From: Pristiophorus japonicus
Lineage: Eukaryota
Assembly (NCBI RefSeq): GCF_044704955.1
Contig: NC_091979.1
Span: forward strand, 317,254,001 to 317,318,000
Reading direction: 5' to 3'
DNA: 64,000 nt
In this document: positions 1,491 through 56,460 of the stretch, piece by piece
Numbering within the stretch: position 1 is the first letter of the stretch
Layout of the letters: every line of letters starts with the position of its first letter
The notes under the pieces: model-generated
Databases searched by the model: none
The model's input: the letters and a program-made list of their open reading frames with translations, nothing else
What the model was told of the DNA's origin: nothing
Translations under genes and position numbers: made by a program

Positions 1491-3303
1491 GGAGCCCACT
1501 AGCTCCCCTGTTGTGCCTTTCCTCTTTCCCAGGTCAGAATCTCTTCAACCACGACCCCCAGCACCTGCTCCAGCCACAATGCAGCACCCCTTTAAGAGGT
1601 GCCGGTTGGCGCAGCACCAAGTTGGCGTGCTGCCTGCATTTCAATCAACGGGCGTGGGTTAATCACGCTTCATGATCTCTGATCCCGTCTTCAGGGCGAT
1701 CCAGTTTAGCCCCTCAGGTGACTGTGTATCATCTCCAATACCTTAAGTTCAGTTTCCAGCATTGCACGGACCTGAGAAAACCTCCACAGAAAGGCTGATT
1801 CTGGTGCTGTTTCAAGGAGGTGATTTTCCATTCGGTGTAAATATGGTGTGAGGCATCTGCACCTCTCCCAATGTTAGGTTCTTCCACTGTCCAATTCCAC
1901 GGAACTTTCCCAACCATTCCTCCCTAACCTTTCTCTAATAGCATTATGGCTACAGTTAGCAGTGTAAGGGTCATGTGTCACTCCACAATCAACAGCTGTT
2001 CAGTTTACTGCCTGTGTTAAAGGCTGGTCTGAATGTTCCTTACAGAGCTGGTACAGTTCACCATCACAAAGTATGGACTATGAGTGACACTTACTGTCAG
2101 CATTAGCGCAGATCAATGACACAAATAAAATCGTAACTACAGTTTATTTTTATTGGTTATTTTAACACTCAGTCTCTGATATTACAGCAAATTAACATTT
2201 CTGCTGGGAAAAGCTATCTCTGCAACTATAAAGCTTTATTATTTTTTAACCATTTTAATCTATTACTTTATCATTTATCCATAAGTCACGCGGTAGAAAT
2301 TAACCGCTTCCATTGAAGAGGCTGGAAATCAGGGAGCTGTGGGCGGCTCATTTCCCGGAGAGAGAGAACATAATCTTTATTCAGGCGTGATACCGACCAT
2401 CCCGGACAAAGCGGGGAAATCGGTGGGGACTGTACTCACAAATACTGAAGCAAAAGGCTGCTTCGAATAAAAATATTAACAGTATATATTAAATAAGGTA
2501 AGTCGGATGAGTATGCTGCCAAACTTGTTCATTGATCAGAGAGCATCACAGCATCTTTCAAACACTGGGGTAGAGTCTCTGCTAATTTGTGATAGTTTTA
2601 TCAGCACAATCCAGTGAAAACTGCTCAACCAGCGCAAAAGATCACGGGAACTCGAGCATGATTTACATCAAGTGTAAATCAAGTATTCCGTCATCTTTAA
2701 CGCTGGTTTAAAAATCTACAAAACTGGCCCGGCCCACAGATAGAAATAACGAGGATGGCGAGTTTCCACCGATTGCGCCCGTTCGAGGAAGGTTTTCAAA
2801 TTAAACTAATTGTCTTAGGCACCAGGCACTAGTCGGCATGATTTAAAAGTTTTACATATTAAACATACTTTATTGACTTACAAACTGACTAGTGTATAAC
2901 AATAAAACTAATAAATGGCTCAGTATAGTTTTCTTTTCAGACATTTCAGTTATCTTAAATCAGGTTTCCCACAGGTGAAAGGCTGGGCACTTCTATTAAA
3001 AATGCTTATTTTTTGTCATAATCAAACTCCAAGGCCTTTTCAAAGCATTCAATAGCTTCGCACTTCTCCCCATCCAGCTGGTGTAGTAACCCAGGAACAC
3101 CAAAGGCCTTGCTGTCTCTGGGATTCCTGTCAATTTGTTTTGATACAATCTTTCTCAAATTTTCGTGACACAATTGCCAACCTTTTGTGCCTTGTTCAAT
3201 TGTAAATCCTTCCAGAAAATGGATGATAGCATTTGATTCAGATTCTTTCTAGTGCAGTTCAAAAAACCCAATCTGCAAAGACACTGCCTGCTGTTTATCA
3301 GGA

Positions 3304-4398
3304 CATAATAACATAAGAACATAAGAAATAGGAGCAGGAGTAGGCCACCTGGCCCCATGAACCTGCTCCGCCATTTAATATTAAGGCTGATCTGATAATG
3401 GACTCAGCTCCACATCCCTGACCACTCCCCATAACTCCTTGTTCCCTTATCGCTCAAAAATCTGTCTATCTCCACCTTAAATATATTCAATGACCCAGCC
3501 TCCACAGTGCTCTGGGGCAGAGAATTCCATAGATTTACAACCCTCTGAGAGAAGAAATTCCTCCTCAACTCAGTTTTAAATGGGTGGCCCCTTATTGTGA
3601 GACTATGTGCCCTAGTTTTAGTTTCCCCTATGAGTGGAAATATCCTCGCTGCATCCACCTTGTCAAGCCCCCTAATTATCTTATATGTTTCGATAAGATA
3701 CCTCTCATTCTTCTGAACTCCAATGAGTATTGGCCCAACTTACTCAACCTACCTCCATAAGTCAACCCCCTCAACTGCGGAATCAACCAAATGAACCTTC
3801 TCTGAACAGCCTCCAATGCAAGTATATCCTTCCTTAAATATGGAAGCCAAAATTGTACGCAGTACTCGATAGGTTGGCCTCACCAATATCCTGTACAGTT
3901 GTAGCAGGACTTTGCTGCTTTTATACTCTATCCCCCTTGCAATAAAGGCCAACATTCCATTTGCCTTCCTGATTACTTGCATACTAACTTTTTGTGTTTC
4001 ATGCACAAGGACCCCCAGTTCCCTCTGTACAGCAGCACTTTGCAATTTTTTTTCATTTAAATTATAATTTGCTTTTCTATTTTTTCTGCCAAAGTGGATA
4101 ACCTCACATTTTCCCACATTATACTATATCTGCCAAATGTTTGCCTGTCTATATCGCTTTGCAGATTTTTTGTGTCCTCACTATTTGCTTTCCTGGCCAT
4201 CTTTGTATCATCAGCAAACTTGGCTACATTACACTCGGTCCCTTCATCCAAGTCGTTAATATAGATTGTAAATACTTGAGGCCGCAGCAACGATCCCTGC
4301 GGCACCCCACTCGTTATTGTTTGCCAACCAGAAAATTACCCATTTATCCCAACTCTCTGTTTTTGTTCGTCAGCCAATCCTCTATCCATGCCAACATG
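3304..4398 (-). mobile_element. CR1 LINE, 3' part of ORF2 (RT) and 3' tail
   Basis: PQGSLL...YINDLD...KFADDTK and RRNFFSQRVVNLWNSLP motifs; ACATAAGA-type tail repeats at 3304-3328. Confidence 0.92.
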
Positions 4399-5807
4399 CT
4401 AGTTGGATCCAAAATTGGTTCAGAGGTAAGAAGCAGAGGGTAATGGTTGATGGATGTTTTTGTGACTGGAAGGATGTTTCCAGTGGAGTCCGCAGGGCTC
4501 AGTACTGGGTCCCTTGCTTTTTGTGGTATACATCAATGATCTAGATTTGATTATAGGGAGTATGATTAAGAAGTTTGCAGATGACACTAAAATTGGCTGT
4601 GTGGTCGTTAATGAAGCAGAAAGTCATGGGCTGCAGGAGGATATCAATCTACTGGTCAGGTGAGCAGAGCAGTGGCAAATGGAATTTAATTTGGAGAAGT
4701 GTGAGGTAATGCACTTTGAGAGGGCTAATAAGGAAAGGATATACACATTAAGCGGTAGACCATGGAAAAGATGAATAAAGGGATCTTGGAGTGCTTGTCC
4801 ACAGATCCCTGAAAGTAAGGTGGATAAGGTGGTGAAGAAGGCATACGGAATGGTTGCCTTTCTTGGCTGAGGCACATAATACAAGAGCAGGGAGGTTATG
4901 CTTAAAATGTATAATACTTTGGTTAGGCCACAGCTGGAGTACTGCGTGCAGTTCTGGTCACCGTATTATAGGAAGGACGTGATTGCAATAGAGAGGGTGC
5001 AGAGGAGATTTGCTAGGATGCTGCCTGGAATGGAGAAACTTAGCTATGCGGATAGATTGGATAGGCTGGGTTTGTTCTCATTGGAACAGAGGAGGTTGAG
5101 AGGAGACCTCATTGAGGTGTACAAACTTTTGAGGGGCCTGGATATAGTGGATAGCAAGGGCCTATTTCCCTTGGTGGTGGGTTCAATTATGAGGGGGCAT
5201 AGTTTTAAGGTGGTTGGTGGAAGGTTCAGAGGGGATTTGAGGGGTGGCTTTTTCAAGCAGAGGGTTGTGGGGGTCTGGAACTTAGTGCCTGGAAGGGTGG
5301 TGGATGTAGAAACCCTCAACGCATTTAAAAGGTGCTTGGATGTGCACTTAAAGTGCCGCAATCTGCAGGGTTACACGGACCTAAAGCTGGTAAGTGGAAT
5401 TAGACTGGATAACCTGTTGGCAGGCACAGCTATGATGGTAAGTACTGCAGGGAATCGAATATATCCAGGGTGATCTCCTGGACGAGTTTCGATTACTTGG
5501 ATGGGTTGGAGAGGAATGTTCCGAGATATTTTTTCCCCAATTGACCTGGGTTTTTATCTGTTTTTTGCCTTTCCCAGGAGATCACATGGCTCCGGTTGGG
5601 GAGGAGTGTAGAATGTTTCGGTGCAAGGGGTGTCGCATTTGTGTGGGGCTGACTGGTTGGGCTGGGTGCTCTTTACCTTTCTGCCATTGTTCATTGATCA
5701 TACGTTTATATGTAACTTTCAGGGCTGCTGACTGAGGGCCGTATGTTTCTTTGTCGGCCGGTGTGGACACGATGGGCCGAAATGGCCTCCTTCTGCGTTG
5801 TAGATTT
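4399..5807 (+). mobile_element. CR1 LINE (different subfamily), 3' part of ORF2 and 3' UTR
   Basis: WIQNWF...QRV, KFADDTK, LVRPQLEYCVQFWSP, RRLRGDLIEVYK; 3' UTR ends ...gggccgaaatggcctccttctgcg. Confidence 0.92.
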
Positions 5808-7100
5808 GCAATTGTGCAAAAATAAATGATGGCTTCTGCTCAAATGCCTTTTCAAAATAGTACTTGCATTGATTGATCAACTCAGCTTTCTGTTGAAAAG
5901 CAGGATTGCGAGGGGCTTTGCTGCCTGGATTTTTGTTCAGTTCAAATAGTTTTTTTCTGTAACACTGACCTATTTGGTGGTGTATGAAGGTAGAGTTTGG
6001 GGTAATTTCTAATGCTTTCTTCAACAGCTCCACAGCTTTTTCCACATCTCCTCTTCTGTAAAATTTTGCTGCATAACGAGTTACATATGGAAGATCAGGG
6101 GACTTCTGCAATGCTTGTTCAACTAATTCGTGTTCTTCCACCTTTTGATTGAACTCTTGTAGTTTTAGAGCCAACAGCACCATGGCTACAGAGTCATCTG
6201 GATCAAGTCCCCACACGTCGCAACTGCTTCACTGATTGGCTGCGGTCACCACTCTCTGGGGTACGAGAAAACGTGTCCACACGAAACAGAACAGTCGCAT
6301 AGCCAACGTTCCATTCAGTGTCATCAGGATCATCCTCCAGAGTCTTCTCAAAACATTCCTTTGCCTCTTCATAGTATTGAGCAGCAGAATTCAACAGTGA
6401 CCAACCCTTCTCCCCGTATACTTCTGGTCTCAGTGCTGTATACCGAGTAAATTGTTTACAGATCATCTCCAGCTTGTCGAGGTAGGACTGGGCCTCTGTC
6501 AGTTGGCCCATGTGATAATATACCCAGGCATAGTTTCCATAGGTGATGATGCTTCTTCTTTCAAATTCATGTTCATGATTCTCCCTCAGAATCTTTTCAG
6601 CTTCCTTTAAGTTTTGAATTGCCCCTTTGAATTGCCTTGCAGACAGTTTACAAATGCGAGGTGGTTGTCAGACCTGGCCTGATAATTCACACCAGCCTGT
6701 ATTAAATCTTGTAATCTATACTTCATGTCGTCCAAGTCAATGCTGTCTCTCTGTGGGCCCCACGTGAAGTGACATTGAAGCTGGCTGAGTTTTGCTTTCA
6801 AGCAATCATTCAGTGTGTTGCTGTAGGAGAACAAAATAATCAAAGCCCATCTTATGTGTATCTAACTTACATTTTTAGCTCATATATAATCAACATAGCA
6901 ATGCTGGTAAAGTCAGAATAGCAGAACAGATGAGCAGCTCAGTGCACATGGGCCCGGAACACTTCCCTACAGCCTCACTGCCTGGCATCCCTCAGTTCGG
7001 GGGAAACCCATTGGAATCCTGTAATGGTCCCGGAGGCAATAACAAATGAACAATTGGCTCATGAGTGTCAGCAGAAATCCACGGTCATCCTTAATATGAT

Positions 7101-7465
7101 CATAGGTAGGAACATAGGAACATGTTCCACCATTCAATTTATCATGGCTGAACTGTATCACAACTCCATCTACCCACCCTGGTTCTGTAACCCTTAATAC
7201 CCTTGCCTAACAAAATTCTATCATCTCAGTTTTGACATTTTTAATTGGCCTAACCTCGACAGCTTATTAGGGGAGAGAGTTCCAGATTTCCACTACCCTT
7301 TGTGTGAAGAAGAGCTGTCTGACATCACCCCTGAATGGCTGAGCTCAAATTTCACTTTCATGCCCCCTTGTTCTGGCCTCCCCCACCAGAGGAAATCGTT
7401 TCTCTCGATCGACCCGGTCAAATCCTTTAATCATATCAAACATCTCAATTAGATCATCCCTTAAC
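7101..7465 (-). mobile_element. CR1 LINE 3' end fragment
   Basis: LRDDLIEMFDMIKGFDRVDREKRFPLVGEARTRGH; cataggaac-type tail. Confidence 0.8.
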
Positions 7466-7479
7466 ACTGGGGAAAGCAG

Positions 7480-7945
7480 GCTCGGGGAATGGGAGACTGG
7501 GGAATGGGGGCTCGGGGATAGAGAGACTGGGGAATGTGGGCTCGGGGAGAGGGAGACTGGGGAATGGGGGCTCGGGGAGAGGGTGACTGGGAAATGGGGA
7601 CTCGGGGAGAGGGAAACTGGGGAATGGGGGCTCGGGGAGAGGGAGACTGGGGAATGGGGGCTCGGGGAGAGGGAGACTGGGGAATGGGAGCTCGGGGAGA
7701 GGGAGACTGGGGAATGGGGGCTTGGGGAAAGGGAGACTGAGGAATGGGGGCTCGGGGAGAGGGAGACTGGGGAATGGGGGCTCGGGGAGAGGGAGTCTGG
7801 GGAATGGGGGCTCGGGGAGAGGGAGACTGGGGAATGGGGGCTCGGGGAGACTGGGGAATGGGGCCTCAGAGAGATGGAGACTGGGGAATGGGGGCTCGGG
7901 GAGAGGGGGAATGGGGGCTCGGGGAGAGGGAGACTGGGGAATGGG
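7480..7945 (+). repeat. G-rich 30-bp minisatellite (GGGGAGAGGGAGACTGGGGAATGGGGGCTC), array 1
   Basis: Tandem units read directly; four G-tracts per unit. Confidence 0.95.
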
Positions 7946-8097
7946 TCAGGGGGGATCATGGTGAGGCCAGGCGGGAGGTAGAAGAGGCCAGGTTGAGTGT
8001 AATTTATTCTGTGGTGGCCTGGAGGAGCTGGACTGATCCCTGGGCTCCAGACAAGGTCACTGGGCCTCTCCAGCCCTGGCCTTCTCTCACACACCAC

Positions 8098-8240
8098 AGC
8101 AACTCCCTTCAGCCCCCTCCCAGCAGATCCTTTCAGTCCCCTCCCTGCAGATCCCTTCAGCCCCCTCCCAGCAGATCCCTTCAGCCCCCTCCCAGCAGAT
8201 CCCTTCAGTCCCCTCGCAGCAGATCCCTTGAACCCCTCAG
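8098..8240. repeat. 24-bp tandem repeat (CAGCAGATCCCTTCAGCCCCCTCC), about 5-6 copies
   Basis: Direct reading. Confidence 0.85.
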
Positions 8241-8356
8241 GAGATCGAGCTGCCGGGGGTGGGCAGAGCTTTCGGGGGGTTGGGAGTCGGGAAGTTGGGT
8301 TTGGAGGGTGGTGGGAGAACTCGGGACCGGGAGAGGCGGGGATTATCTTTAACCTA

Positions 8357-8552
8357 CCCGGCAACTGATGATGCAGCTCGCAGTATTTGTCTGATTGGAT
8401 AGTTCAATGTTTGGAAAGTTTATTTCGGCACCAACACAAACTCTCCCCGTGTCTTTTCTACCCGGAGCTTGCTGACTCACAGCCTGTTTTTATTGTAATT
8501 GGAGACAAATATACCCTCGAACCAATCAGTTCGGAGGAGTCTGAGTGTAAAA
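8357..8552 (+). promoter_or_regulatory. Putative MHC promoter: two X1/X2-Y modules, CCAAT box and TATA-like element
   Basis: CCCGGCAACTGATG (8357-8370), 20 nt, then CTGATTGG (8391-8398). Second module CCCGGAGCTTGCTGACTCA (8461-8479) with ATTGG at 8498; both have 37 nt from CCCGG to ATTGG. CCAATCAG at 8522-8529, TGTAAAA at 8546-8552. Confidence 0.72.
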
Positions 8553-8586
8553 CACTCTGCACTGGGCAAAGCGCACGAACAGATAG

Positions 8587-11500
8587 CACAGAGAGACAGT
8601 CCCAGAGACACAGTATCAGCACAGGGCACAGAGAGACAGTCCCAGAGACACAGTATCAGCACAGGGCACCGAGACAGTCCCAGAGACACAGTATCAGCAC
8701 AGGGCACAGAGAGACAGTCCCAGAGACACAGTATCAGCACAGGGCACAGAGAGACAGTCCCAGAGACACAGTATCAGCATAGGGCACAGCGAGCCAGTCC
8801 CAGAGACACAGTATCAGCACAGGGCACAGAGAGACAGTCCCAGAGACACAGTATCAGCACAGGGCACAGAGACAGTCCCAGAGACACAGTATCAGCACAG
8901 GGCACAGAGAGACAGTCCCAGAGACACAGTATCAGCACAGGGCACAGAGAGACAGTCCCAGAGACACAGTATCAGCACAGGGCACAGAGAGACAGTCCCA
9001 GAGACACAGTATCAGCACAGGGCACAGAGAGACAGTCCCAGAGACACAGTATCAGCACAGGGCACAGAGAGACAGTCCCAGAGACACAGTATCAGCACAG
9101 GGCACCGAGAGACAGTCCCGGAGACACAGTATCAGCACAGGGCAGAGAGAGACAGTCCCAGAGACACAGTATCAGCACAGGGCACAGAGAGACAGTCCCA
9201 GAGACACAGTATCAGCACAGGGCACCGAGAGACAGTCCCGGAGACACAGTATCAGCACAGGGCACAGAGAGACAGTCCCAGAGAGAGAGTATCAGCACAG
9301 GGCACAGAGACAGTCCCAGAGACACAATATCAGCACAGGGCACAGAGAGACAGTCCCAGAGACACAGTATCAGCACAGGGCACAGAGAGACAGTCCCAGA
9401 GACACAGTATCAGCACAGGGCACAGAGACAGTCCCAGAGACACAGTATCAGCACAGGGCACAGAGAGACAGTCCCAGAGACACAGTATCAGCACAGGGCA
9501 CAGAGAGACAGTCCCAGAGACACAGTATCAGCACAGGGCACAGAGAGACAGTCCCAGAGACACAGTATCAGCACAGGGCACAGAGAGACAGTCCCAGAGA
9601 CACAGTATCAGCACAGGGCACAGAGAGACAGTCCCAGAGACACAGTATCAGCACAGGGCACCGAGAGACAGTCCCGGAGACACAGTATCAGCACAGGGCA
9701 CAGAGAGACAGTCCCAGAGAGAGAGTATCAGCACAGGGCACAGAGACAGTCCCAGAGACACAATATCAGCACAGGGCACAGAGAGACAGTCCCAGAGACA
9801 CAGTATCAGCACAGGGCACAGAGAGACAGTCCCAGAGACACAGTATCAGCACAGGGCACAGAGAGACAGTCCCAGAGACACAGTATCAGCACAGAGCACA
9901 GAGAAACAGTCCCAGAGACACAGTATCAGCACAGGGCACAGAGTGACAGTCCCAGAGACACAGTATCAGCACAGGGCACAGAGACAGTCCCAGGGACATA
10001 GTATCAGCACAGGGCACAGAGAGACAGTCCCGGAGACACAGTTTCAGCACAGGCACAGAGAGTCAGTCCCAGAGACACAGTATCAGCATAGGGCACAGAG
10101 AGACAGTCCCGGAGACACAGTATCAGCATAGGGCACAGAGAGACAGTCCCGGAGACACAGTACCAGCACAGGGCACAGAGACAGTCCCAGAGACACAGTA
10201 TCGACACAGGGCACAGAGAGACAATCCCAGAGACACAGTATCAGCACAGGGCATAGAGACAGTCCCAGAGACACAGTATCAGCACAGGGCACAGAGACAG
10301 TCCCAGAGACACAGTATCAGCACAGGGCACAGAGAGACAGTCCCAGAGACACAGTATCAGCACAGGGCACAGAGAGACAGTCCCAGAGACACAGTATCAG
10401 CACAGGGCACAGAGAGACAGTCCCAGAGACACAGTATCAGCACAGGGCACCGAGAGACAGTCCCGGAGACACAGTATCAGCACAGGGCACAGAGAGACAG
10501 TCCCAGAGACAGAGTATCAGCACAGGGCACAGAGAGACAGTCCCAGAGACAGAGTATCAGCACAGGGCACAGAGACAGTCCCAGAGACACAATATCAGCA
10601 CAGGGCACAGAGAGACAGTCCCAGAGACACAGTATCAGCAAAGGGCACAGAGAGACAGTCCCAGAGACACAGTATCAGCACAGGGCACAGAGAGACAGTC
10701 CCAGAGACACAGTATCAGCATAGGGCACAGAGAGACAGTCCCAGAGACACAGTATCAGCACAGGGCACAGAGAGACAGTCCCGGAGACACAGTATCAGCA
10801 CAGGCACAGAGAGTCAGTCCCAGAGACACAGTATCAGCATAGGGCACAGAGAGACAGTCCCGGAGACACAGTATCAGCATAGGGCACAGAGAGACAGTCC
10901 CAGAGACACAATATCAGCACAGGGCACAGAGAGACAATCCCAGAGACACAGTATCAGCACAGGGCACAGAGAGACAGTCCCAGAGACACAGTATCAGCAC
11001 AGAGCACAGAGAGACAGTCCCAGAGACACAGTATCAGCACAGGGCACAGAGAGACAGTCCCAGAGACACAGTATCAGCACAGGGCACAGAGACAGTCCCA
11101 GGGACATAGTATCAGCACAGGGCACAGAGAGACAGTCCCGGAGACACAGTATCAGCACAGGCACAGAGATTCAGTCCCAGAGACACAGTATCAGCATAGG
11201 GCACAGAGACAGTCCCAGAGACACAGTATCGACACAGGGCACAGAGAGACAATCCCAGAGACACAGTATCAGCACAGGGCATAGAGACAGTCCCAGAGAC
11301 ACAGTATCAGCACAGGGCACAGAGAGACAGTCCCAGAGACAGAGTATCAGCACAGGGCACAGAGACAGTCCCAGAGACACAGTATCAGCACAGGGCACAG
11401 AGAGACAGTCCCAGAGACACAGTATCAGCACAGGGCACAGAGAGACAGTCCCAGAGACACAGTATCAGCACAGGGCACAGAGAGACAGTCCCAGAGACAC

Positions 11501-13019: not shown

Positions 13020-13115
13020 GAATCACACGGTCTGAATTGGGCGCAGCTCACGGACGGTCTCTCGGAAAAGGATTGCCTGCAAACTGCTCATCCCAGCCTG
13101 TCGAGGGAAGTAACA

Positions 13116-14183: not shown

Positions 14184-14424
14184 GGCTGATCCCGAAGTGA
14201 AGTTCACTGGGACTAGAATCTGGACTTGCTGTGTCGCAAGGAGGGTTCATTCAGAAGCAATCCACGATTCTGCATCTTCATTTCGTTTGATTGTCACTGG
14301 CTGCTGCCAGTGTTAATAGTAATCGGTAATGTATCTATCATTGAGTGGGTTTGGGGATATTTTCTTTTTGGTGATTGGATAGAAATCTCCAGTTGGGTCT
14401 TTTGGTGTTTAATGTAAATGAGAT

Positions 14425-14495
14425 GTGTCGATTTCGGCACGGGCTGGATGGCCAAATGGTCGTCTTCCGTGCTGTAACCATTCTATGATTCTATG
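14425..14495 (+). mobile_element. Short CR1/SINE 3' tail fragment
   Basis: ...ggccaaatggtc...gctgtaacc followed by (ATTCTATG)2, the typical CR1 terminal octamer repeat. Confidence 0.65.
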
Positions 14496-14505
14496 TATGG
14501 TGGCC

Positions 14506-15170: not shown

Positions 15171-15501
15171 GGTGTGGGTTCTAGTATTTCCCCCAGAGCC
15201 GGGAGCAGCAGCAACGTGGTGAGTGGGAGTGACACTGAGAGAGGAGCAGCCAGTAAAGAGGTGAGTGAAACCTGGGGACCTTACTGTGGGTAAATAGTGA
15301 AAGATTATTTCCAGTGGTGGGCGAATGGGGAACTAGGGAACGGAAACCAAAGATTCTAAAACCTAAAGGGAATGTGATAAATATTTGAAAAGGAAGAATG
15401 TTATAAGATCTGGGGGTGGGGTGGGCGGGGGGGAATGGGATTACAGAAGAGAGTGCGAGCTCCGAGGCCGAATGATCTCCTCCTGTGCAGTCATTTCTAT
15501 A
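15171..15501 (+). repeat. Unique-sequence block duplicated in inverted orientation at about 32211-32630
   Basis: Reverse complement matches 32211-32630, apart from about 100 extra bp in that copy. Confidence 0.9.
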
Positions 15502-15504
15502 AAT

Positions 15505-46151: not shown

Positions 46152-47377
46152 CAATCCATTATTAAGGGAGTAGTAGCAGGACATTTAGAAAATCATAATA
46201 CAATCAAGCAGAGTCACATGGTTTTATAAAAGAGAAATCGTGTTTGACAAATTTATTATTGTTCTTTGTGGTTGAAATGAGCAGGGTGGATGAAGGGGAA
46301 TCAGTAGATGTAGAGTATTTGGATTTCCAAATGTCATTCGATAAGGTGCCACATAAAAGGTTATTGCAGAAGATAAGAGCTCACGGTGTTGGGGGTAATA
46401 TATTAACATGGATAGAGGATTTGCTAACTAACAGAAAACAGAAAGTCGGGAAAAATCAATCATTTTCAGTTTGGCAAACAGTAACTAGTGAGGTGCTACA
46501 GGGATCAGTGCTGGGGCTTCAACTATTTACAATCTATGTTAATGACTTGGATGAAGGGACCGAGTGTACTGTAGTCAGATTTGCTGACGATACAAAGATA
46601 GGTGGGAAAGCAAGTTGTGAGGAGGACACAAAGAGGCCAAAACTGCTCATTTCATTAAGGTATGTAACCACCGTAAATTGGAGGCCACGCTGTGGAGTGG
46701 AGTGGCTGCTGACTTTTCATGGAATGACCACTGCTAGCCCAATTACCCTCCCGGGATTCCCCCCTCACCGCTCCGCTGCTGCCGATCCCCACGGCCAGCA
46801 CGTCATCACCGTGTGTACCACCGATCTACCCCCATCCCCCATTCCCCCCCCCCCCACCATTCCCGACGGCGATATTTCCCTCCAAAAATCTTTGGCCCGC
46901 CCAGTGGTACCAAAACTAGCTTTTTCCGGCTGGTCGAGTGAGGCTGAGGCCTCCTGCAGCGATGGTGCAGCTTCCCTTAAAGGGGAGGATGCACTGCCGC
47001 TGACGCCATGTTTTTTTTCCGGCAACTGCCATGTTGGCCTGACAAATAGGCCCCGGGTTCAGCCGGGCCGCCATCAGGCAGCCTGGCATGCCCTCTTGAA
47101 TGTCAGGGCACCAGCCCGGCCAAAACTCTCCCTGGTGGCCCAGTGGGCTGAAGTTTTAAAAGCACGGAGGCTCTCCCCTTTAAGTGAGGGGAAGAGTCGA
47201 GTGACACGATGCCATGATGACATCATCGCGGCAGTGACACCCCGGACCCCCCAACTTCCGCCCCTCAGTTGTTGTTACCGCCACTTTTTTGCCTCTCGGG
47301 TGTTGTCACCGCTCCCATTAGGATCGACTTTCGGATCAAAACAGAAAAAGCCAAAGAGCCGCAGCTGCGGTAAAAAA

Positions 47378-50300
47378 CATCCCCTGAAGTCCCAAGGGAT
47401 CCCAGCATCCCTTGGGAGCACTGTATATAAGCCGACCCTAAGGCCTGTTCCCCACTCTGGAGTGTCTTATTAAAGACTGAGGTCACTGTTACTTTAATCT
47501 CCCTGTGTGCAGCCTCATCTGTATTAGGAACACAATAACTGGCGACGAGAATACGAATCCAATGCAAAGATGCAGCAAACTGTGGGTATCCTGGAGAAGT
47601 TCTCAGAGGGTGAGGACTGGGAAGCCTATGTCGAACGGCTAGACCAGTACTTTGTAGCCAACGAGCTGGACGGAGAAGGAAGCGCTGCAAAAAGGAGAGT
47701 GGTCCTCCTCACTGTCTGCGGGGCACCGACCTACAGCCTCAGGAAGAATCTTCTGGCTCCATTGAAAGTCATATGAGGAGCTGTGCACACTGATTCGGGA
47801 GCATCTTAACCCAAGGGAGAGCGTGCTGATGGCGAGGTATCGGTTCGAAACGTGCCAGCGATCTGAAGGTCAGGAAATGGCGAGCTATGTCGCCGAGCTA
47901 AGGCGACGTGCAGGACAATGTGAGTTTGATGGCTATCTGGAGCAAATGCTCGGAGACTTTTTTGTACTGGGCATTGGCCATTCGACCATCCTATGAAAAC
48001 TTTTGATTGTAGAGACACCGACCCTCAGCAAGGCCATTGCGATAGCACAGGCGTTTATGTCCACCAGTGATAACACCAAACAAATCTCTCAGCACACAAG
48101 TGCTAGCAATGTTCATAAATTAACTGGAACTGTGTTTGCAATCAGAAATGTACAGGGCAGAACCCATGAGTCTGCAACTGCCAGCAGGCCTCAGGTGACC
48201 CAGATGACTCAGAGTCCCCAACAAAGGATGAATGCAAGGCAATTCACACCTTGTTGGCATTGTGGAGGCTTCCATTCAGCCTATTCATGCCGCTTCAAAG
48301 GGTATGTTTGCAAGAGCTGTGGAACAATGGGGCACCTCCAACGAGCTTACAGATGAGCTGCAAGCTCTGCAGAACCTGCTAGCCACCAAATGGCAGAAGA
48401 AGATCGGTCCATGATGGATCAAAGCAATTTCGAGCCTCAGAGAGAGGAGGCAGATGCTGAAGTACACACATTTTCGACAAAATATCCACCTATAATGCTA
48501 AACGTAAAATTGAATGGCTTGCCCGTAGCCATGGAACTGGACACTGGCGCTAGCCAATCCATCATGAGTAAAAAGATGTTTGAGAGACTGTGGTGCAACA
48601 AAGCATTCAGACCAGCCCTGAGCCGCATCCACACGAAACTGAGAACGTACACCCAAGAGCTCATCACTGTCCTGGGCAGTGCCATGGTCAAGGTCACCTA
48701 CGAGGGCACGGTGCACGAACTGCCACTCTGGATTGTCCCGGGCGATGGCCCCACACTGCTTGGAAGGAGCTGACTGGGCAAAATCCGCTGGAACTGGGAT
48801 GACATCCAAGTGCTGTCACATGTCGATGAGGCCTCATGTACTCAGGTTCTTAACAAACTTCCTTCCCTTTTTGAGCCAGGCATTGGAAACTTTTCCGGGG
48901 CGAAGGTGCGGAGCCACTTGGTCCCAGAGGCACGACCCATTCACCACAAGGTGCGAGCGGTACCTCACATGATGAGGGAGAGAGTGGAAATCGAGCTGGA
49001 CAGGCTGCAACGCGAGGCCATCATCTCCCCAGTGGAATTCAGCGAGTGGGCCAGCCCGATTGTTCCAGTACTCAAAAGTGATGGCACGGTCAGGATTTGC
49101 GACGATTATAAAGTAACTATTAATCGTTTCTCGTTACAGGACCAATATCTGCTACCTAAGACAGACGACCTATTTGCGACGCTGGCAGGAGGCAAGACAT
49201 TCACCAAGCTCGACCTGACTTCGGTCTACATGACGCAAGAGCTGGAGGAGTCTTCGAAGGGCCTCACCTGCATCAACACGCACAAGGGACTGTTCATCTA
49301 CAACAGATGCACGTTTGGAATTCGGTCGGCTGCAGAGAAACATGGAGAGCCTACTCAAGAGGGTATCACACACGATGGTCTTTCACGACGACATATTGGT
49401 CACGGGTCGGGACACCGCCGAGCACCTACAAAGCCTGGAGGAGGTCCTCCAGCGACTGGATCGCGTAGGACTGCGGCTGAAGAGGTCGAAATGCGTCTTC
49501 ATGGCAACAGAAGTGGAGTTTTTGGGGAGAAATATCGCGGCGGACGGCATTCGGCCCACAGACGCCAAGACAGAGGCTATCAGGAATGCACCCAGGCCAC
49601 ACAACGTCATGGAGCTGCGGTCGTTCATGGGACTCCTCAACTATTTTGGTAAATTCCTACCGGGGTTAAGCACCCATTTAGAGTCCCCACCCATGTGTTA
49701 TTGCACAAAGGTGAGAACTGGGTATGGGGAAAAATACCAAGTAAATGCTTTTGAGAAAGCCAGAAACATTTTATGCTCCAACAAGCTGCTTGTAATGTAT
49801 AACCCGTGTAAAAGACTTGTGCTAGCATGTGACGCGTCGTTGTACGGAGTTAGGTGTGTATTACAACAAGCTAATGTTGCGGGGAAGTTGCAACCTGTCG
49901 CCTATCCTTCCAGGAGCTTGTCTAAGGTCAAGAGGGCCTACAGCATGATTGAGAAAGAGGCATTAGTGTGTGTATTCGGGGTAAAGAAAATGCATCAGTA
50001 CCTGTATGGCCTCAAATCTGAGCTGGAAACCGATCACAAGCCCCTCACATCACTGTTTGCTGAAAACAAGGGGATAAATACTAATTCCTCAGCCCGCATA
50101 CAAAGGTGTGCACTCTTGCTATCAAGGTATAATTATACCATCCGCCACAGGCCAGGCACTGAGAACTGTGCGGATGCTCTCCGTGGGCTACCATTGCCCA
50201 CCGCGGGGGTGGAAATGGCGCAGCCTGCAAACTTGTTGATGATGGTGCAGCCTGCAGACTTGTTGATGGTCATGGAAGCATTTGAAAATGATAAATCACC

Positions 50301-51913
50301 TGTCACGGCCCACCAGATTTGGATTTGGACTTGGACCAGCAAAGATCTTCTGCTGTCCCGAGTAAAAAAACTGTGTACTGCATGGGAGCTGGGCCAACAT
50401 CCCCGTTGAAATGCAAGAGCCAATCAAGCCGTTCCAGCGGCGAAAGGATGAGCTGTCCATTCAGGCAGATTGCCTGTTGTTGGGTAACCGCGTAGTGCTA
50501 CCCAAAAAGGGCAGGGAGACGTTCATCTCGGATCTCCACAGCACACATCCGGCTGTAGCAATGATGAAAGCGATAGCCAGATCCCACGTGTGGTGGCCTG
50601 GTAGCGACTCTGACTTAGAGTCCTGTGTACGGCAATGCAGCGTATGTGCTCAGTTGAGCAATGCGCCCAGAGAGGCACCGCTAAGTTTGTGGTCCTGGCC
50701 CTCCATACGATGGACGAGAATCCATGTCGACTATGCGGGCCCGTTTCTCGGTAAAATGTTCCTGGTGGTGGATGCTTTTTCAAAATGGATTGAATGTGAA
50801 ATAATGTCAGGAAGCACCGCCACCGCCACCATTGAAAGCCTGAAGGCCATGTTTGTCACCCACGGCCTACCTGACATACTGGTCAGTGACAACGGGCCAT
50901 GTTTCACCAGTGCCGAATTTAAAGAATTCCTGACCCGCAATGGGATCAAACATGTCACCTCGGCCCTGTTTAAACCAGCCTCCAATGGGCAGGCAGAGAG
51001 GCAGTACAAACCATCAAACAGAGCCTTAAATGACAGAAAGCGCACTCCAAACCCACGTGTCCCGAGTACTGCTCAGCTACCGCGCGAGACCCCACTCGCT
51101 CACAGTTGTGCCCCCGGCTGAGCGACTCATGAAAAGGACACTTAAAACCAGACTCTCGCTGGTTCACCCCAACCTGCATGATCAGGTAGACAGCAGGCGG
51201 CAGCAACAAAATGTAAACAATGGTCGTGCCACTGTGTCATGGGAAATTGATCTGAATGACCCTGTGTATGTGCTAATCTATGGACATGGTCCCAAGTGGA
51301 TTGCGGGCAGGGTGATAGTTAAAGAAGGGAATAGGGTGTTTGTAGTCAAACTAAACAGTGGACAAATTTGCAGAAAACACCTGGACCAAACGAGGCTGCG
51401 GTTCACAGACTGCCCTGTACAACTCACAGCAGACACCACCTTTATCGAGCCCACAACACACACCCAAAGGATCAACGTCACCACGCCGGGCCAGGAAATT
51501 GAACACATCACGTCCAACAACCCAGCAAGGCCAGGCTCACCCAGCAGCCCTGCAGGACCAACAACACGCCAGCCCAGCGAGGGCACAGCCAACACACCAG
51601 AACAGACATTTGTACTGACGCGGTCCACCACGGAAATAAAGACTCCTGACCGCCTTGCCTTGTAAATAGTTTTCACTTTGACTTTGGGGGTGGGGGGAGT
51701 GATGTTGTGTATCTGTAAAGCATGTACTCCCATGTTCCGCCACTAGGGAGCTCATCCCCTGAAGTCCCAAGGGATCCCAGCATCCCTTGGGAGCACTGTA
51801 TATAAGCCGGCCTCTAAGGCCTGTTCCTCACTCTGGAGTATCTTATTAAAGACTGAGGTCATTGTTAATTTAACCTCCCTGTGCGCAGCCTCATCTGTGT
51901 TAGGAACACAATA
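47378..51913 (+). mobile_element. Decayed Ty3/Gypsy LTR retrotransposon related to 34317-38996
   Basis: 5' LTR remnant 47378-47537 (first ~50 bp missing); PBS TGGCGACGAG at 47540 (tRNA-Ser-like); CCHC gag, LDTGA, FHDD, RH and IN motifs; PPT at 51686-51702; 3' LTR 51703-51913. Confidence 0.93.
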
Positions 51914-52635: not shown

Positions 52636-52640
52636 ATGAG
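52636..52640 (+). CDS. IFIT: IFIT exon 1 coding part (ATG AG)
   Basis: gcactATGAG|GTAACG. The phase-2 donor matches the acceptor at 55007 and gives MSNTQK, the standard IFIT two-exon layout. Confidence 0.82.
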
Positions 52641-55007
52641 GTAACGGTCATTGGAATTCCTCCTTTATTTAAATTTACGTGTAGACTATTGAACAAGGAA
52701 CTAGTTTTCAGAAATAAAGTAGCTTACATTACAAAGCAGTTGAAATGCAGAGAGCTGGGATTAGTGGTTCACAGTGAGACACACAGATAAGGGAACACTG
52801 CTGCACCAAGACTGGTGATAGTCAGTAAACATGAGGCAAAAGGCAGACCTGTTCATAGGATTATATTCAGTAATAATTCAAATTACAATTAAAATTGGTT
52901 TCTGTTCAGAATTCATAGAAAGTACAAAGTTAATCTTGAATATTATACTGTGGTGGAAAGGCGCATTCTGTAAGTGCCCTTAGGTCATATCCAGAGTTTG
53001 AAGAAAGAAAGTTTCACTTTGTGTTCCATGGGAATCTAGAAGGGACCTACTAATGTAAAATAGTGATTTCCAGCACTTTCATATATCCAAACTAAAGCAA
53101 CCTGAACTATAAAGCAAAGGGAGAGTACAGCATGGACTGGGATGGGGGAATGGACACAGCATGAAATGCAGGAGGAGAGTGCCAGCTTAAAGTGTGTAGG
53201 AGAAGGAAAAGTGCTGACTTACATTGAGAATGGGGGCGGGGGAGAAGAGTGCTGACATGAACTGGGGGAAAGGACAGGTGCAGCAGTTTGAACGGAGCAG
53301 CAAAGGGAGGAAAGCCACCATGAACTGGGGCAGGGGTAAGAATGACAGCTTGGATTGTGGGGGGAGGGAGACGAGAGCCAACAGGAACAAGAGGCCGGCG
53401 GAGTAGAGTGCAAGGAGAAGCTGGGATGGCTGGGGGATGAAGTGTATCGACGTGAGTTTAACAGCAAGGAAGAAAGAATTTGTGTTGATGTAACACCTTA
53501 TCACACCTCTCAGAAATGTCCCAAAGTGCTTCACATTCAGTGAATTATTTTGCAGTGCAGTCAGTTGTTTTGTCGGGCAATGTGACAGCTCAGTTTGCAC
53601 AACAACAACTGGCATTTATATAGCGCCTTTAAACATCCCAAGGCTCTTCACAGTAAATTAATCAGACAACAATGGACACCGAGGCAAAGGTGGAGATATT
53701 TAGAAGGCTGACAAAAAGCTTATTCAAAGAGATAGGTTTTATGGAGAGTCTTAAAGTGGGATAGTGAGGTGGCAAAGTTTAGCTGAAGCCACGGCCAACA
53801 TTGGTGTGTTAGGTGGAGGATGGACACGAGCCCAAGTTGGAGGAATGCAGAATTCGCGGAGGATCTGTTATTGGTGGTTTTGCTTGAGGGAAGAATATTG
53901 GAAAATACATCTCCTTGCTTTTCTTCAAATAGTGCCATTGAATCTTTAAGGTCCACCTGAACCACTTGAACAGGCAGATACTGCCTTGGCTTAAAATCTC
54001 ACCTGTATGGTGAAAGATTTTCAGCAGGATAAGAGTCAGTTCATGAAACATGGTCTTTCAGAATCCTTTGTGTTGGACCTTCTTTTTTGCTTTAAGGGTA
54101 GGATTACAGAGGATTACATAGGATACACAGCACAGAAACAGGCCATTCAGCCCAACCATGCTGGTTTATGCTCCACTCGAGCTTCCTCTTGTCTTTCCTC
54201 AGCTAATTCTATCTGCATAACCCTCTAATCCCTTCTCCCTCATTTGCTTACCGGGTCTCCCCTTAAATGCATCTATAGTATTTCCTTCAACCAGTCCCTA
54301 TGGTCGCGAGTTCCACATTCTCACCGCTCTCTGGGTAAAGAAGCTTCTTTTGAATTCCCTATTTGATTTCTTGGTGTCTATCTTATACTGATGGCCTCTA
54401 GTTTTGCTCTTTCACAAAAGAGGAAATATTCTCTCTGTAAGCACTCTTATCAAAACCTTTCAGAATTTTAAAGAACTTCAATTGAATATTGGAGTTGGAA
54501 TGATCTGGCTCACAGACAGCAGGGTCCATGAGGGTTCCTGTTCAGTGGAGAGTTACCTGGACTGCCAATGTGAGACGGAGAGCATTTTAGAATTAGCTCT
54601 GATCTTTTTAGTGAGGAGCTCCCATTTCAGAATGGAATACATGAATGAGAAGGAGATGTAATGGGTGAACCAACAGGCAGCCTCAGAACTTCAATCAATG
54701 TTCCTGTTCATATCATTGGGAGTGGAAGTGTTTGAGGTGATGCTGCACATTGGGTGAGAAGACTAAATGTCCAGGAGCTGGTACATCAGCCAGCATGAAG
54801 GAGACCAGTGTAAGTACAGCTGAGATTTGCAGTCATACCGTTGCCTTTTGCAATGGTTTTAGCAGAGGTCACCTTTGTGTGACCAGAGATTTCATGGTCA
54901 GTGGGTCCAGGAGTCGGGAGAAGGCTTTAGTTAAAGAAACCGGAGAGAGGGGAGGGGGTGACACAGCCAGTCTGAGATGGGTTTTGATGAATTTTGTTCT
55001 CTTGCAG

Positions 55008-56460
55008 CAACACACAGAAAGATTTGTTGAAAGTGAAGCTCGATCAGCTTCAATGTCACTTCACATGGGGCCCACAGAAAGAAAACATTGACTTGGACAA
55101 CATGAAGTATAGATTGCAAGATTCAATACAGGCTGGTGTGGAATATCAGGCCAGGTCTTACAACCACCTCGCTTTTGTAAACTGTCTGCAAGGCAACTGT
55201 GAAGAGGCAATTCAAAACTTAAAGGAAGCTGAAAAGATTCTGGGGGAGAACCATGAACATGAATTTGAAAGAAGAAGCATCATCACCTATGGAAACTATG
55301 CCTGGGTATATTATCACATGGGCCAACTGACAGAGGCCCAGTCCCACCTCGACAAGCTGGAGATGATCTGTAAACAATTTACTGATGGCTCTCGGTATAC
55401 AGCACTGATACCTGAAGTATACGGGGAGAAGGGTTGGTCACTGTTGAGTTCTGCTGCTCAATACTATGAAGAGGCAAAGGAATGTTTTGAGAAGGCTCTG
55501 GAGGAAGATCCTGATGACACTGAATGGAACGTTGGCTATGCGACTGTTCTGTTCCGTCTGGAAGGGTTTTCTGGTACCCCAGAGAGTGGTGACCGCAGCC
55601 AATCAGTGAAGCAGTTGCGACGTGTGCTGGAACTTGATCCAGATGACTCTGTAGCCATGGTGATGTTGGCTCTAAAACTACAAGAGTTCAATCAAAAGGA
55701 GGAAGCACTGAAATTAGTTGAACAAGCATTGCAGAAGTCCCCTGATCTTCCATATGTAACTCGTTATGCAGCAAAATTTTACAGAATTAATGGAGATGTG
55801 GAAAAAGCTGTGGAGCTGTTGAAGAAAGCTTTAGAAATTAGCCCAAACTCTACCTTCTTACACCACCAAATAGGTCTGTGTTACAGAAAAAAACTATATC
55901 GACTGATCAACAATCCAGGCAGTAAAGACCCTCGCAATCCTGCTTTTCAACAGAAAGCTGACTTAATCAATAAATGCAAGTACCATTTTGAAAAGGCATT
56001 TGAGCCCCGCCCTTTAACATCTATTAAGCCACAGCTGGATTTTGCAGGAATCTGTTCATTAAATGAAGAATTTTTCAAAGCAGATGCGATCTACAGCAAT
56101 CTACTGAAATTAGAAAATATTCGCCAAGAAAATAAGCAGCAAATATGTTTAGCGGTCGGATTATTTGAACTGCACCAGAAAAGATCTGAATCAAATGCCG
56201 TCACCCATTTTCTGGAAGGAGTGAAAGTCAAATATGACTCAATAGAACGGAGAAGGTGTCACGAAAACTTGGAGAAGATAGCAGAAACACAACTTTGCAT
56301 AAATTCAAGAGACAGCAAAGCCCTTGGTGTTCTTGGGTTACTGCACCAGCTGGATGGGAAGAATTGTAAAGCTATTGAATGCTTTGAAAAGGCCCTGGAG
56401 TTTGATTGTCACAATGAAGAATATCTAAGTGCTCTCGCTGAATTACGCCTTTCTATCTAG
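55008..56460 (+). CDS. IFIT: Interferon-induced protein with tetratricopeptide repeats (IFIT5/IFIT1-like), main exon; 485 aa with exon 1
   Basis: Acceptor ttttgttctcttgcag|; CHFTW, GNYAWVYYHM, EKGW, PYVTRYAAKFYR and HHQIG motifs; open to TAG. Confidence 0.96.

What the first reader, a model, noticed from the sequence alone, without database searches (positions are those of the whole stretch)
3006..56460. MHC class I gene embedded in an IFIT birth-and-death cluster
Seen: the order is IFIT-psi(-), MHC I(+), IFIT-psi(+), orphan ISRE promoter, intact IFIT(+). Established: mammalian IFIT clusters are not in the MHC and contain no class I genes. Inference: an antigen-presenting gene has moved into an interferon-stimulated locus and could share its regulation, making a combined antiviral sensing and presentation module. 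IFIT-psi1 lacks exon 1 and its promoter, and the MHC cassette lies on that side, so the arrival of the cassette may have disabled it.
Basis: partly seen in the sequence, partly recalled or inferred. Interest (0 to 1): 0.8.

Follow-up and report, generated by a model that had tools for sequence, protein, structure and literature searches.

The report
Shark MHC-I retrogene inside IFIT cluster
In the Japanese sawshark, an intact antigen-presenting (MHC class I) gene with no coding introns lies among interferon-induced IFIT genes instead of in the MHC, probably carried there by a jumping-gene mechanism, but in this copy nothing shows that it shares the IFIT genes' interferon switch.

Summary
The order is IFIT pseudogene (-), intact single-ORF MHC class I gene (+), 5'-truncated IFIT pseudogene (+), a lone ISRE/TATA IFIT-type promoter, and a complete two-exon IFIT gene (+).

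What I add:
- The class I cassette (7946-14506) splits a 30-bp satellite. In a paralogous unit in the same window, that satellite is unbroken and abuts the ISRE promoter.
- The cassette ends in a CR1-like LINE tail that butts against the satellite.
- In 16 other sharks and rays, class I and IFIT genes sit on different chromosome-size contigs.
- A 2023 survey reported that all elasmobranch class I genes map to the MHC.

Relocation into the IFIT cluster is therefore well supported.

The "shared regulation" idea is not supported for this copy. The partner IFIT has no promoter, the cassette holds no ISRE, and it carries its own SXY-type promoter. "The cassette's arrival disabled IFIT-psi1" is also not supported. 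The missing promoter is replaced by a LINE fragment 480 bp away from the cassette, and the pseudogene has frameshifts as well.

Earlier notes of this scan report the same class I/IFIT unit on other DNA of this genome, at eight or more places over about 2.6 Mb. Here I confirmed six near-identical annotated proteins. Expression is suggested but not proven.

The parts
3009..3302 (-). Diverged IFIT 3' fragment. It matches exon-2 nt 1121-1414 at 76.5% identity and has two in-frame stops. It may be older than psi1 proper.
3300..5837 (.). LINE debris (reverse-transcriptase tail ORFs) interrupting IFIT-psi1
5838..6852 (-). IFIT-psi1. It covers exon-2 nt 1-998 plus 30 bp of intron and is 92.2% identical to the intact IFIT. 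It has 1-bp and 2-bp frameshift deletions.
6853..7105 (+). Spacer with no match elsewhere in the window. It holds the 5' coding exons used by annotated class I models: ATGCTG|GTAAAG at 6902-6907 (fits P0241), and 7024-7089, which matches the first exon of P0244, a different copy.
7106..7464 (-). 5'-truncated LINE fragment (ORF2 C-terminus plus octamer tail). It lies where the IFIT promoter and exon 1 should abut the satellite.
   Evidence: (tblastn E 2.5e-22)
7466..7945 (+). Promoter-side half of the 30-bp G-rich satellite; an inverted copy of 33359-32885
7946..8339 (+). 5' part of the class I cassette, including a 24-bp repeat at 8097-8236
8340..8585 (+). Doubled X1-X2-Y (SXY-type) MHC promoter, with modules about 104 bp apart and a CCAAT box at about 8520
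   Evidence: read from the sequence
8586..13019 (+). 40-bp minisatellite of 112 copies. Both borders carry GCACTGGGCA, so promoter and 5'UTR were probably once contiguous.
13020..13115 (+). Class I 5'UTR, with the annotated splice acceptor AG at 13045-13046. A public contig starts exactly at 13046.
13116..14183 (+). Intact MHC class I ORF of 355 aa with no introns, identical to the core of annotated protein P0241. The peptide-terminus anchor residues are conserved.
14184..14498 (+). 3'UTR ending in a CR1-like LINE tail (about 14432-14498; ATTCTATGATTCTATG at 14480-14495) that abuts the satellite
14507..15502 (+). Distal half of the same satellite (to 15168) plus the unit's flank; an inverted copy of 33286-32210, 95.5% identical in the flank
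23944..26603 (+). IFIT-psi2. It covers exon-2 nt 671-1449 (to 24720) plus the 3' flank. It is 5'-truncated by LINE elements and has two frameshifts and a TAG. It is 95% identical to psi1.
32210..33362 (-). Unbroken flank plus 30-bp satellite of the paralogous unit, with no class I insert
33363..33760 (+). Orphan IFIT-type promoter and exon 1: tandem ISREs at 33611-33629, TATAAAA at 33673-33679, and CTGAG|GT where canonical copies have ATGAG|GT
34314..51900 (.). Transposon fill: an LTR retrotransposon at 34314-38998 (LTRs 94.9% identical), LINEs at 42565-47473, and a second LTR retrotransposon at 48003 to about 51900
52636..52640 (+). Canonical first coding exon (ATGAG|GTAACG) of the intact IFIT. 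Only a degenerate ISRE (AGTTTCTATTCA, 52476-52487) lies upstream.
53672..53763 (+). Repeat-derived alternative first coding exon used by annotated model P0121 (donor TA|GTGAGG)
55008..56460 (+). Intact IFIT exon 2 (483 codons plus stop), made of TPR repeats

Best explanation
The window is a stretch of the Pristiophorus japonicus IFIT cluster into which a coding-intron-less MHC class I gene has been copied.

Shown directly:
- A 6.56-kb cassette interrupts a 30-bp satellite. The cassette holds its own doubled SXY promoter, a 4.4-kb minisatellite, the 5'UTR, a 355-codon ORF and a 3'UTR.
- In a paralogous IFIT unit 17 kb away, the same satellite is continuous and directly abuts an ISRE/TATA promoter.
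- The cassette points away from its IFIT partner (head-to-head).
- Its 3' end is a CR1-like LINE tail that butts against the satellite.

Inferred history:
- An MHC class I transcript carrying a LINE 3' tail was reverse-transcribed by LINE machinery into the satellite upstream of an IFIT gene. The transcript probably started upstream of the normal promoter, so the promoter came along.
- The IFIT-plus-class-I unit was later multiplied by segmental duplication.
- The IFIT partner decayed independently, through a LINE-associated loss of promoter and exon 1, frameshifts and a LINE insert.

Conclusion for this copy: the class I gene is a passive neighbour of the IFIT genes and not part of an interferon-switched module. 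It still looks like a working peptide-presenting gene.
For: Identity and integrity of the genes:
-. Every peptide-terminus anchor position that could be aligned is conserved between the window protein and the classical shark class I sequences compared, including the solved nurse-shark chain 6LUP.

Insertion into the satellite:
- The self-comparison shows 7491-7966 and 14497-15357 are both inverted copies of one continuous array plus flank at 33359-32439. The flank is 95.5% identical.
- The repeat phase at the two junctions overlaps by about 5 nt, which fits a short target duplication.

LINE tail:
- ATTCTATGATTCTATG lies at 14480-14495.
- The same tail architecture is seen on LINE copies in the window.
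- Dozens of unrelated public contigs share only 14450-14495 and diverge on both sides.

Relocation:
- In 16 chondrichthyan species, class I hits and IFIT hits sit on different chromosome-size contigs.
- The window gene's clade has 100/100 support. Its Heterodontus, Scyliorhinus (two species), Stegostoma and Chiloscyllium members share the contig of other class I genes.
- Published survey: all elasmobranch class I genes map to the MHC (PMC10751288).

Unit duplication:
- Six distinct annotated proteins differ at only 8 of 355 positions.
- The first exon of one of them (P0244) maps to window 7024-7089, left of the satellite.

No shared switch in this copy:
- No ISRE core lies in the cassette.
- The partner's promoter is replaced by a LINE fragment.
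- psi1 carries further lesions.
Against: - A retrocopy of a mature mRNA should not carry its promoter, yet the cassette holds at least 250 bp of SXY promoter. An unusual upstream-initiated template or a DNA-level step is therefore needed.
- The target-site duplication cannot be proven inside a repeat. Roughly 1 in 5 random phase pairs would look similar.
- The chromosome that carries the sawshark's own MHC is unknown to me.
- Annotated class I models start in the spacer next to IFIT-psi1 (6902-7105). Some transcriptional coupling to that region is therefore possible.
- At the time of insertion the tandem ISREs would have lain only about 1.2 kb from the class I promoter.
- The public contigs are not on record as RNA, so expression is not proven.
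Confidence: 0.55

Rival explanations
1. DNA-level move. A class I gene that had already lost its coding introns (for example by recombination with its own cDNA) was copied with its promoter into the IFIT cluster by segmental duplication or non-homologous repair. On this reading the LINE tail is only a LINE fragment in its 3'UTR.
For: - The cassette includes about 640 bp upstream of the 5'UTR with a doubled X1-X2-Y promoter.
- Both minisatellite borders carry GCACTGGGCA, so promoter and 5'UTR were contiguous.
- An earlier scan note (s1-879240, not checked by me) describes the same doubled SXY architecture on a class I gene on another sequence piece.
Against: - The cassette ends at the last octamer of a LINE tail, directly against the satellite. 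That is what target-primed reverse transcription produces and would be a coincidence for a DNA breakpoint.
- The satellite phase is nearly continuous across the insert.
Confidence: 0.2
2. One reading: a combined antiviral module in which the class I gene shares the IFIT locus's interferon-responsive control. The adjacency would then be functional and selected.
For: - Head-to-head placement upstream of an IFIT. In the intact paralogous unit, tandem ISREs lie about 250 bp from the satellite, so at insertion they were about 1.2 kb from the class I promoter.
- Annotated class I models use 5' exons in the IFIT-psi1 5' spacer.
- The unit has been amplified.
- Teleost processed class I L-lineage genes are induced by interferon and virus (titles and abstracts of PMC11695323 and PMC6797598).
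Against: - In this copy the partner's ISRE promoter is absent.
- There is no ISRE core in 7946-14506 or in 13019-13120.
- The only strong ISRE is 19 kb away, beyond transposons and another pseudogene.
- The amplified partner IFIT is dead.
- Class I genes have their own SXY control.
Confidence: 0.15
3. Ancestral or secondary linkage. In the sawshark the IFIT cluster lies on the MHC chromosome, so the class I gene is not really outside the MHC and no special relocation occurred.
For: - I could not see the sawshark's chromosome-scale context.
- The Heptranchias class I relatives are on unplaced scaffolds, so the one other squalomorph is uninformative.
Against: - Sixteen of 16 informative species separate IFIT and class I contigs.
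- The window and, per earlier notes, about 2.6 Mb around it hold IFITs and class I copies but no MHC framework genes.
- The gene is inserted in an IFIT-specific satellite.
Confidence: 0.07
4. Assembly artefact: the class I cassette was misjoined into the IFIT region at the repeat arrays.
For: - The cassette is bounded by tandem arrays on both sides and contains a 4.4-kb array.
- No public contig crosses the junctions (none runs over the ends).
Against: - Both bounding arrays are the same 30-mer in the same orientation and near-continuous phase, with flanks homologous to one intact unit.
- A protein model from another copy has its first exon in the same left-flank sequence.
- Earlier notes report the same arrangement at eight or more places.
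- There are no gaps in the window.
Confidence: 0.03

Closest known systems
Teleost MHC class I L-lineage 'processed' genes (Dijkstra et al. 2007, as summarised in PMC4364491)
   Same: - Class I genes lacking the introns between the alpha1, alpha2 and alpha3 exons.
- Proposed origin by retrotransposition of spliced mRNA.
- Multi-copy.
- Some are induced by interferon or virus.
   Different: - L-lineage molecules lack the peptide-terminus anchor residues and probably do not bind peptides. The sawshark gene keeps them.
- Here the whole coding region is one ORF.
- The 3' end is a LINE tail.
- The gene sits in an IFIT cluster and belongs to a different, shark-wide class I clade.
Elasmobranch MHC organisation (Verissimo et al. 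2023, PMC10751288)
   Same: The protein belongs to a shark class I clade whose galeomorph members share the chromosome-size contig of other class I genes.
   Different: That survey found no class Ia or Ib gene outside the MHC in elasmobranchs. It covered galeomorph sharks and batoids only. This sawshark gene lies among IFIT genes, which are on another chromosome in 16 other species.
LINE-tail-dependent retrocopies (stringent CR1/L2-type LINEs mobilising RNAs that carry their 3' tail; from my own knowledge, not tested against a reference)
   Same: - Intron-free coding sequence.
- 3' end made of a LINE tail with octamer repeats instead of poly(A).
- The insertion junction lies exactly at the tail end.
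   Different: The copy carries its parental-type promoter and stayed intact and multi-copy. Most retrocopies are promoterless and dead.
Vertebrate IFIT clusters (tandem two-exon ISGs with ISRE promoters; mammalian locus 10q23, from my own knowledge)
   Same: - Two-exon genes with a 5-nt first coding exon ATGAG.
- TPR proteins.
- ISRE/TATA promoter.
- A mix of intact genes and pseudogenes.
   Different: It contains an antigen-presenting gene and is heavily invaded by LINEs and LTR elements. The intact gene's own promoter shows only a degenerate ISRE.

Membership tests
MHC class I heavy chain, peptide-presenting type | alpha1-alpha2 MHC_I domain plus C1-set alpha3 domain, transmembrane segment and cytoplasmic tail | tested here: met
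   Pfam MHC_I 1.1e-52 and C1-set 1.1e-14. Best solved relative is nurse-shark class I 6LUP, 4.6e-94. TM and tail align with shark class I.
MHC class I heavy chain, peptide-presenting type | Conserved residues that hold the peptide termini (equivalents of Y7, Y59, R/Y84, T143, K146, W147, Y159, Y171) | tested here: met
   Invariant columns Y23, R98, T155, K158, W159, Y172 and Y184 (precursor numbering) are shared with 6LUP and classical Triakis and Heterodontus sequences. Y73 is kept in 6 of 7 sequences.
MHC class I heavy chain, peptide-presenting type | Location in the MHC next to TAP/PSMB genes; polymorphism; b2m and peptide binding | tested here: not met
   Location: among IFIT genes, with no MHC framework gene in 64 kb. 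Polymorphism and binding cannot be tested with these tools.
Processed retrogene | Coding sequence without the parental introns | tested here: inconclusive
   One uninterrupted ORF covers all domains. The parental gene structure could not be fetched. That class I genes normally have one exon per domain is established knowledge.
Processed retrogene | 3' end made by reverse transcription (poly(A) or LINE tail) at the insertion junction | tested here: met
   The CR1-like tail ends at 14495-14498, against the satellite.
Processed retrogene | Target-site duplication | tested here: inconclusive
   About 5 nt of phase overlap (AATGG) at the two satellite junctions; not decisive inside a repeat.
Processed retrogene | Absence of the parental promoter | tested here: not met
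   A doubled X1-X2-Y promoter lies inside the cassette.
IFIT gene (intact copy) | TPR protein encoded by a tiny first coding exon (ATGAG) plus one large exon | tested here: met
   TPR families. 77-79% identical to shark IFIT5-like proteins. 52636-52640 plus 55008-56460 reads as stored protein P0248.
IFIT gene (intact copy) | ISRE-bearing promoter and interferon induction | tested here: inconclusive
   Only a degenerate ISRE at 52476-52487 and one in intron 1 at 53010-53021. Induction cannot be tested here.
Birth-and-death gene cluster | Intact paralogues beside pseudogenes with independent lesions | tested here: met
   psi1, psi2, the orphan promoter and one intact gene, each with different lesions. 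At least 13 near-identical annotated IFIT5-like sequences, plus further clusters, in this species.
Divergent interferon-co-regulated gene pair | A shared ISRE-bearing control region between the two genes | tested here: not met
   No ISRE between 6822 and 13115 other than a LINE-borne GAAAGTGAAA at 7350-7359. The partner's promoter is absent.

The most novel reading that the evidence does not exclude
The sawshark has founded a working, amplified family of peptide-presenting class I genes outside the MHC. On this reading the family was seeded by one LINE-mediated, promoter-carrying retrocopy that landed about 1.2 kb from an IFIT tandem ISRE. In copies that keep the ISRE, or through the 5' exons in the IFIT-psi spacer, the family would be transcriptionally tied to the interferon response. 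That would be the first elasmobranch exception to 'all class I genes are in the MHC', and a natural test of whether class I function needs MHC linkage to TAP and the proteasome genes.
Probability: 0.25. Interest if true: 0.85.

Novelty: new variant of a known kind. Interest (0 to 1): 0.62.

Why it matters
Cartilaginous fish are the reference for the "ancestral, tightly linked MHC". A 2023 survey concluded that no elasmobranch class I gene lies outside the MHC.

An intact, classical-looking class I family that escaped to an interferon-gene cluster, lost its coding introns and multiplied would have two uses:
- It shows how LINEs that do not use poly(A) can create new immune genes.
- It gives a natural experiment on whether peptide-presenting class I genes need physical linkage to their processing genes.

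For genome annotation, it also warns that the IFIT array here consists of class I-plus-dead-IFIT units, not purely of IFIT genes.

Tried and rejected
- **Synteny in other sharks.** The other locus collections hold viruses, metagenomes and prokaryotes, and I did not use them. As a substitute I compared the contig lengths listed with the protein hits.
- **The 33.6-kb promoter as distant first exon of the intact IFIT.** I considered a 21-kb transposon-filled intron. I rejected this after finding a canonical ATGAG|GT exon at 52636 that reproduces stored protein P0248. The two promoters are not alignable.
Rejected here: in the intact paralogous unit the satellite lies upstream of the promoter.
- **Bacterial-type promoter and terminator scan**. 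It was irrelevant to a vertebrate locus.
- **Findings look-ups.** Two failed on wording. No notes exist on IFIT-synteny genes (LIPA, CH25H and others).
- **Literature.** Searches found nothing on intronless shark class I genes or on IFIT-MHC linkage.
- **RNA evidence.** The three runs that hold the gene are not on record as RNA and are kept only as contigs, so expression level, strand and induction cannot be read.
- **Joined sequences.** I made one in-frame reading of the two IFIT pieces, in a local script only, to compare with P0248.


Full report
**What is in the window**

The genome is Pristiophorus japonicus (Japanese sawshark). The class I ORF and the IFIT ORF match UniRef proteins of that species at about 100%. 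The window has no gaps.

ORF listing, Pfam and self-comparison give this map:

| Element | Coordinates | Strand |
|---|---|---|
| IFIT fragment | 3009-3302 | - |
| LINE debris | 3300-5837 | |
| IFIT-psi1 exon 2 | 5838-6852 | - |
| Unmatched spacer | 6853-7105 | |
| 5'-truncated LINE fragment | 7106-7464 | - |
| 30-bp G-rich satellite, promoter-side half | 7466-7945 | + |
| Class I cassette | 7946-14506 | + |
| Same satellite, distal half | 14507-15168 | + |
| Flank of the unit | to 15502 | |
| Transposons | following the flank | |
| IFIT-psi2 | 23944-26603 | + |
| 23-bp arrays | 28755-31602 | |
| Inverted flank and unbroken satellite | 32210-33362 | - |
| Lone ISRE/TATA promoter with short exon | 33363-33760 | + |
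| Two LTR retrotransposons and LINEs | 34.3-51.9 kb | |
| Complete IFIT gene | 52636-52640 plus 55008-56460 | + |

**The IFIT members**

- *Intact IFIT.* Exon 2 is an open 483-codon TPR reading frame, 77-79% identical to IFIT5-like proteins of other sharks. The annotated model P0121 adds a repeat-derived first exon at 53672-53763. I also found a canonical first coding exon, ATGAG|GTAACG, at 52636-52640. Read in frame with exon 2, it equals the stored 485-aa protein P0248 with no mismatch. That reading was a local script only; no joined sequence went to a search tool. The intact IFIT is therefore a normal two-exon gene with a 2.4-kb intron.
- *Orphan promoter.* The 33.6-kb promoter really is orphan. 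It has perfect tandem ISREs (33611-33629), a TATA box, and CTGAG|GT where ATGAG|GT is expected. It is not alignable with the 52.4-52.6-kb promoter.
- *psi1.* It carries 1-bp and 2-bp frameshift deletions and a 2.5-kb LINE insert. Its 3' piece is much more diverged (76.5%) and may be an older fragment.
- *psi2.* It lacks codons 1-223 and has two frameshifts and a stop.

"Birth-and-death cluster" is a fair description.

**The class I gene**

- 13116-14183 encodes signal peptide, alpha1, alpha2, alpha3, transmembrane segment and tail in one ORF.
- It keeps the residues that hold peptide termini in classical molecules, including the solved nurse-shark 6LUP.
- In a maximum-likelihood tree it falls in a 100/100-supported shark-wide clade. 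Its neighbours there are a 74%-identical sawshark paralogue (P0004), a Squalus sequence, Heptranchias, and galeomorph genes.
- Six distinct annotated sawshark proteins differ from it at only 8 of 355 positions. The window's own product is the core of P0241.

**How the cassette sits in the IFIT unit**

- Both satellite halves and the distal flank are inverted copies of one continuous satellite plus flank at 33359-32210. The flank is 95.5% identical.
- In that intact paralogous unit the satellite directly abuts the ISRE promoter.
- The cassette was therefore inserted into the satellite upstream of an IFIT gene, pointing away from it.
- The repeat phase at the two junctions overlaps by about 5 nt. 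This fits a clean insertion with a short target duplication but is not decisive inside a repeat.
- The cassette's last ~65 bp are a CR1-like LINE tail ending in ATTCTATGATTCTATG at 14495. The tail architecture matches LINE copies in the window. Many unrelated public contigs share only 14450-14495.

An intron-free coding region ending in a LINE tail exactly at the junction points to LINE-mediated reverse transcription.

Against a simple mRNA copy, the cassette also holds a doubled X1-X2-Y promoter (8340-8585). The promoter is now separated from the 5'UTR by a 4.4-kb minisatellite whose two borders share GCACTGGGCA. The template therefore either began upstream of the promoter, or a DNA-level step was involved. 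I keep the second option as a rival at 0.2.

**Did the gene move?**

Instead I used the contig lengths listed with the protein hits.

- In 16 species with chromosome-size contigs for both families, class I and IFIT hits never share a contig. Examples:

| Species | Class I contig (bp) | IFIT contig (bp) |
|---|---|---|
| Heterodontus francisci | 74,466,956 | 93,226,506 |
| Scyliorhinus canicula | 163,470,629 | 144,966,053 |
| Hypanus sabinus | 187,191,526 | 68,388,869 |

- The galeomorph members of the window gene's own clade share the contig of the other class I genes.
- Verissimo et al. 2023 state that no elasmobranch class Ia or Ib gene was found outside the MHC. Their survey covered galeomorphs and batoids only (PMC10751288).

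Relocation into the IFIT cluster is thus well supported. The sawshark's own MHC chromosome remains unchecked.

**Is regulation shared, and did the cassette kill psi1?**

- The core GAAANNGAAA occurs six times in the window. None lies in the cassette or its 5'UTR. The only convincing ISRE is the orphan promoter, 19 kb past the gene's 3' end.
- In the psi1 unit, the place where the promoter should meet the satellite is occupied by a 5'-truncated LINE fragment. The satellite's promoter-side edge is also truncated.
- The cassette lies 480 bp further out. Promoter loss is therefore better explained by a LINE-associated deletion than by the cassette. The order of events is unknown.
- Two observations keep the module idea alive at low probability. 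At the time of insertion the tandem ISREs would have been about 1.2 kb from the class I promoter. And annotated class I models place their first coding exons in the spacer beside psi1: 6902-6907 for this copy, and 7024-7089 matching P0244 from another copy.

**Expression and contiguity**

- Three public runs hold the gene. Their kind is not on record, and they are contig sets of transcriptome-like size.
- Contigs of organism A cover 13355-13640, 13632-13946 and 13933-14492 with 1, 2 and 8 differences.
- One contig begins exactly at 13046, the annotated acceptor and near the expected start site. No contig enters the minisatellite or the satellite.
- This fits RNA but does not prove it. With several near-identical copies it also cannot be assigned to this copy.
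- A run of "organism B" holds 303 bp with one difference.

**Relation to earlier notes of this scan**

Notes on other windows of the same sequence report the same 1068-nt intronless class I gene among IFITs. The places range from about 0.64 Mb before to about 2.0 Mb beyond this window. One copy is reported as broken, and the notes claim a CR1 tail and insertion in the G-rich satellite.

What I tested here:
- The tail and the satellite insertion: both hold.
- Multiplicity, partly, through the six annotated proteins and the shared left-flank exon.

The other windows themselves I did not see.

**Verdict**

- The relocation reading is supported.
- The co-regulation and "arrival disabled it" readings are not supported for this copy.
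- Closest known are the teleost L-lineage processed class I genes (PMC4364491). Those lack peptide-anchor residues; this gene keeps them, ends in a LINE tail and sits in an IFIT cluster.
- I rate it a new variant of a known kind, of real interest to comparative immunogenetics.

Noticed in passing
window 8586-13019: A 4.4-kb array of 112 copies of a 40-bp unit lies between the class I SXY promoter and the 5'UTR. Both borders carry GCACTGGGCA, which suggests local expansion that pushed the enhancer module 4.4 kb away from the core promoter.
   Followed up: partly
window 53672-53763: The annotated IFIT model P0121 (and P0251 from another copy) takes its first 30 codons from a common shark repeat inside IFIT intron 1. 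The canonical ATGAG exon at 52636 gives the 485-aa product instead.
   Followed up: yes
window 6902-7105: Annotated class I models place their first coding exons in the spacer beside IFIT-psi1, 6 kb upstream of the ORF. The donor of the 7024-7105 exon is the end of a LINE tail. A TATATAA lies at 6881-6887.
   Followed up: partly
window 7350-7359 and 53010-53021: ISRE-like cores occur outside promoters. GAAAGTGAAA lies inside a mutated LINE ORF2 tail next to the satellite, and CAAAGTGAAACT lies in intron 1 of the intact IFIT.
   Followed up: no
window 28755-31602: Two adjacent arrays of a 23-bp unit (AGGAGAAACCGAGGGTGGGGTAC) are embedded in a 1.3-kb tandem duplication (28755-30052 vs 30051-31312, 90.6% identical).
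   Followed up: no
window 3-875: A 25-bp GC-rich tandem array (GGATTGGCCGGCGGTGAGGAGCGGA, 35 copies) lies at the left edge of the window.
   Followed up: no
window 59198-63700: An endogenous retrovirus-like element with gag-like, RNase H/integrase ORFs (for example 61960-63198) and a palindromic stretch at 59198-59410. I observed it only.
   Followed up: no
window 34314-38998: An LTR retrotransposon (integrase and RT confirmed) with 253-bp LTRs 94.9% identical lies just downstream of the orphan IFIT exon 1. It may mark when that unit lost its coding exon.
   Followed up: partly
window 13423-13725 (public run X2, organism B): A 2021 run labelled as a different organism holds a 303-bp contig of the class I ORF with a single difference. 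It is either the same species under another label or a close relative with the same gene.
   Followed up: no
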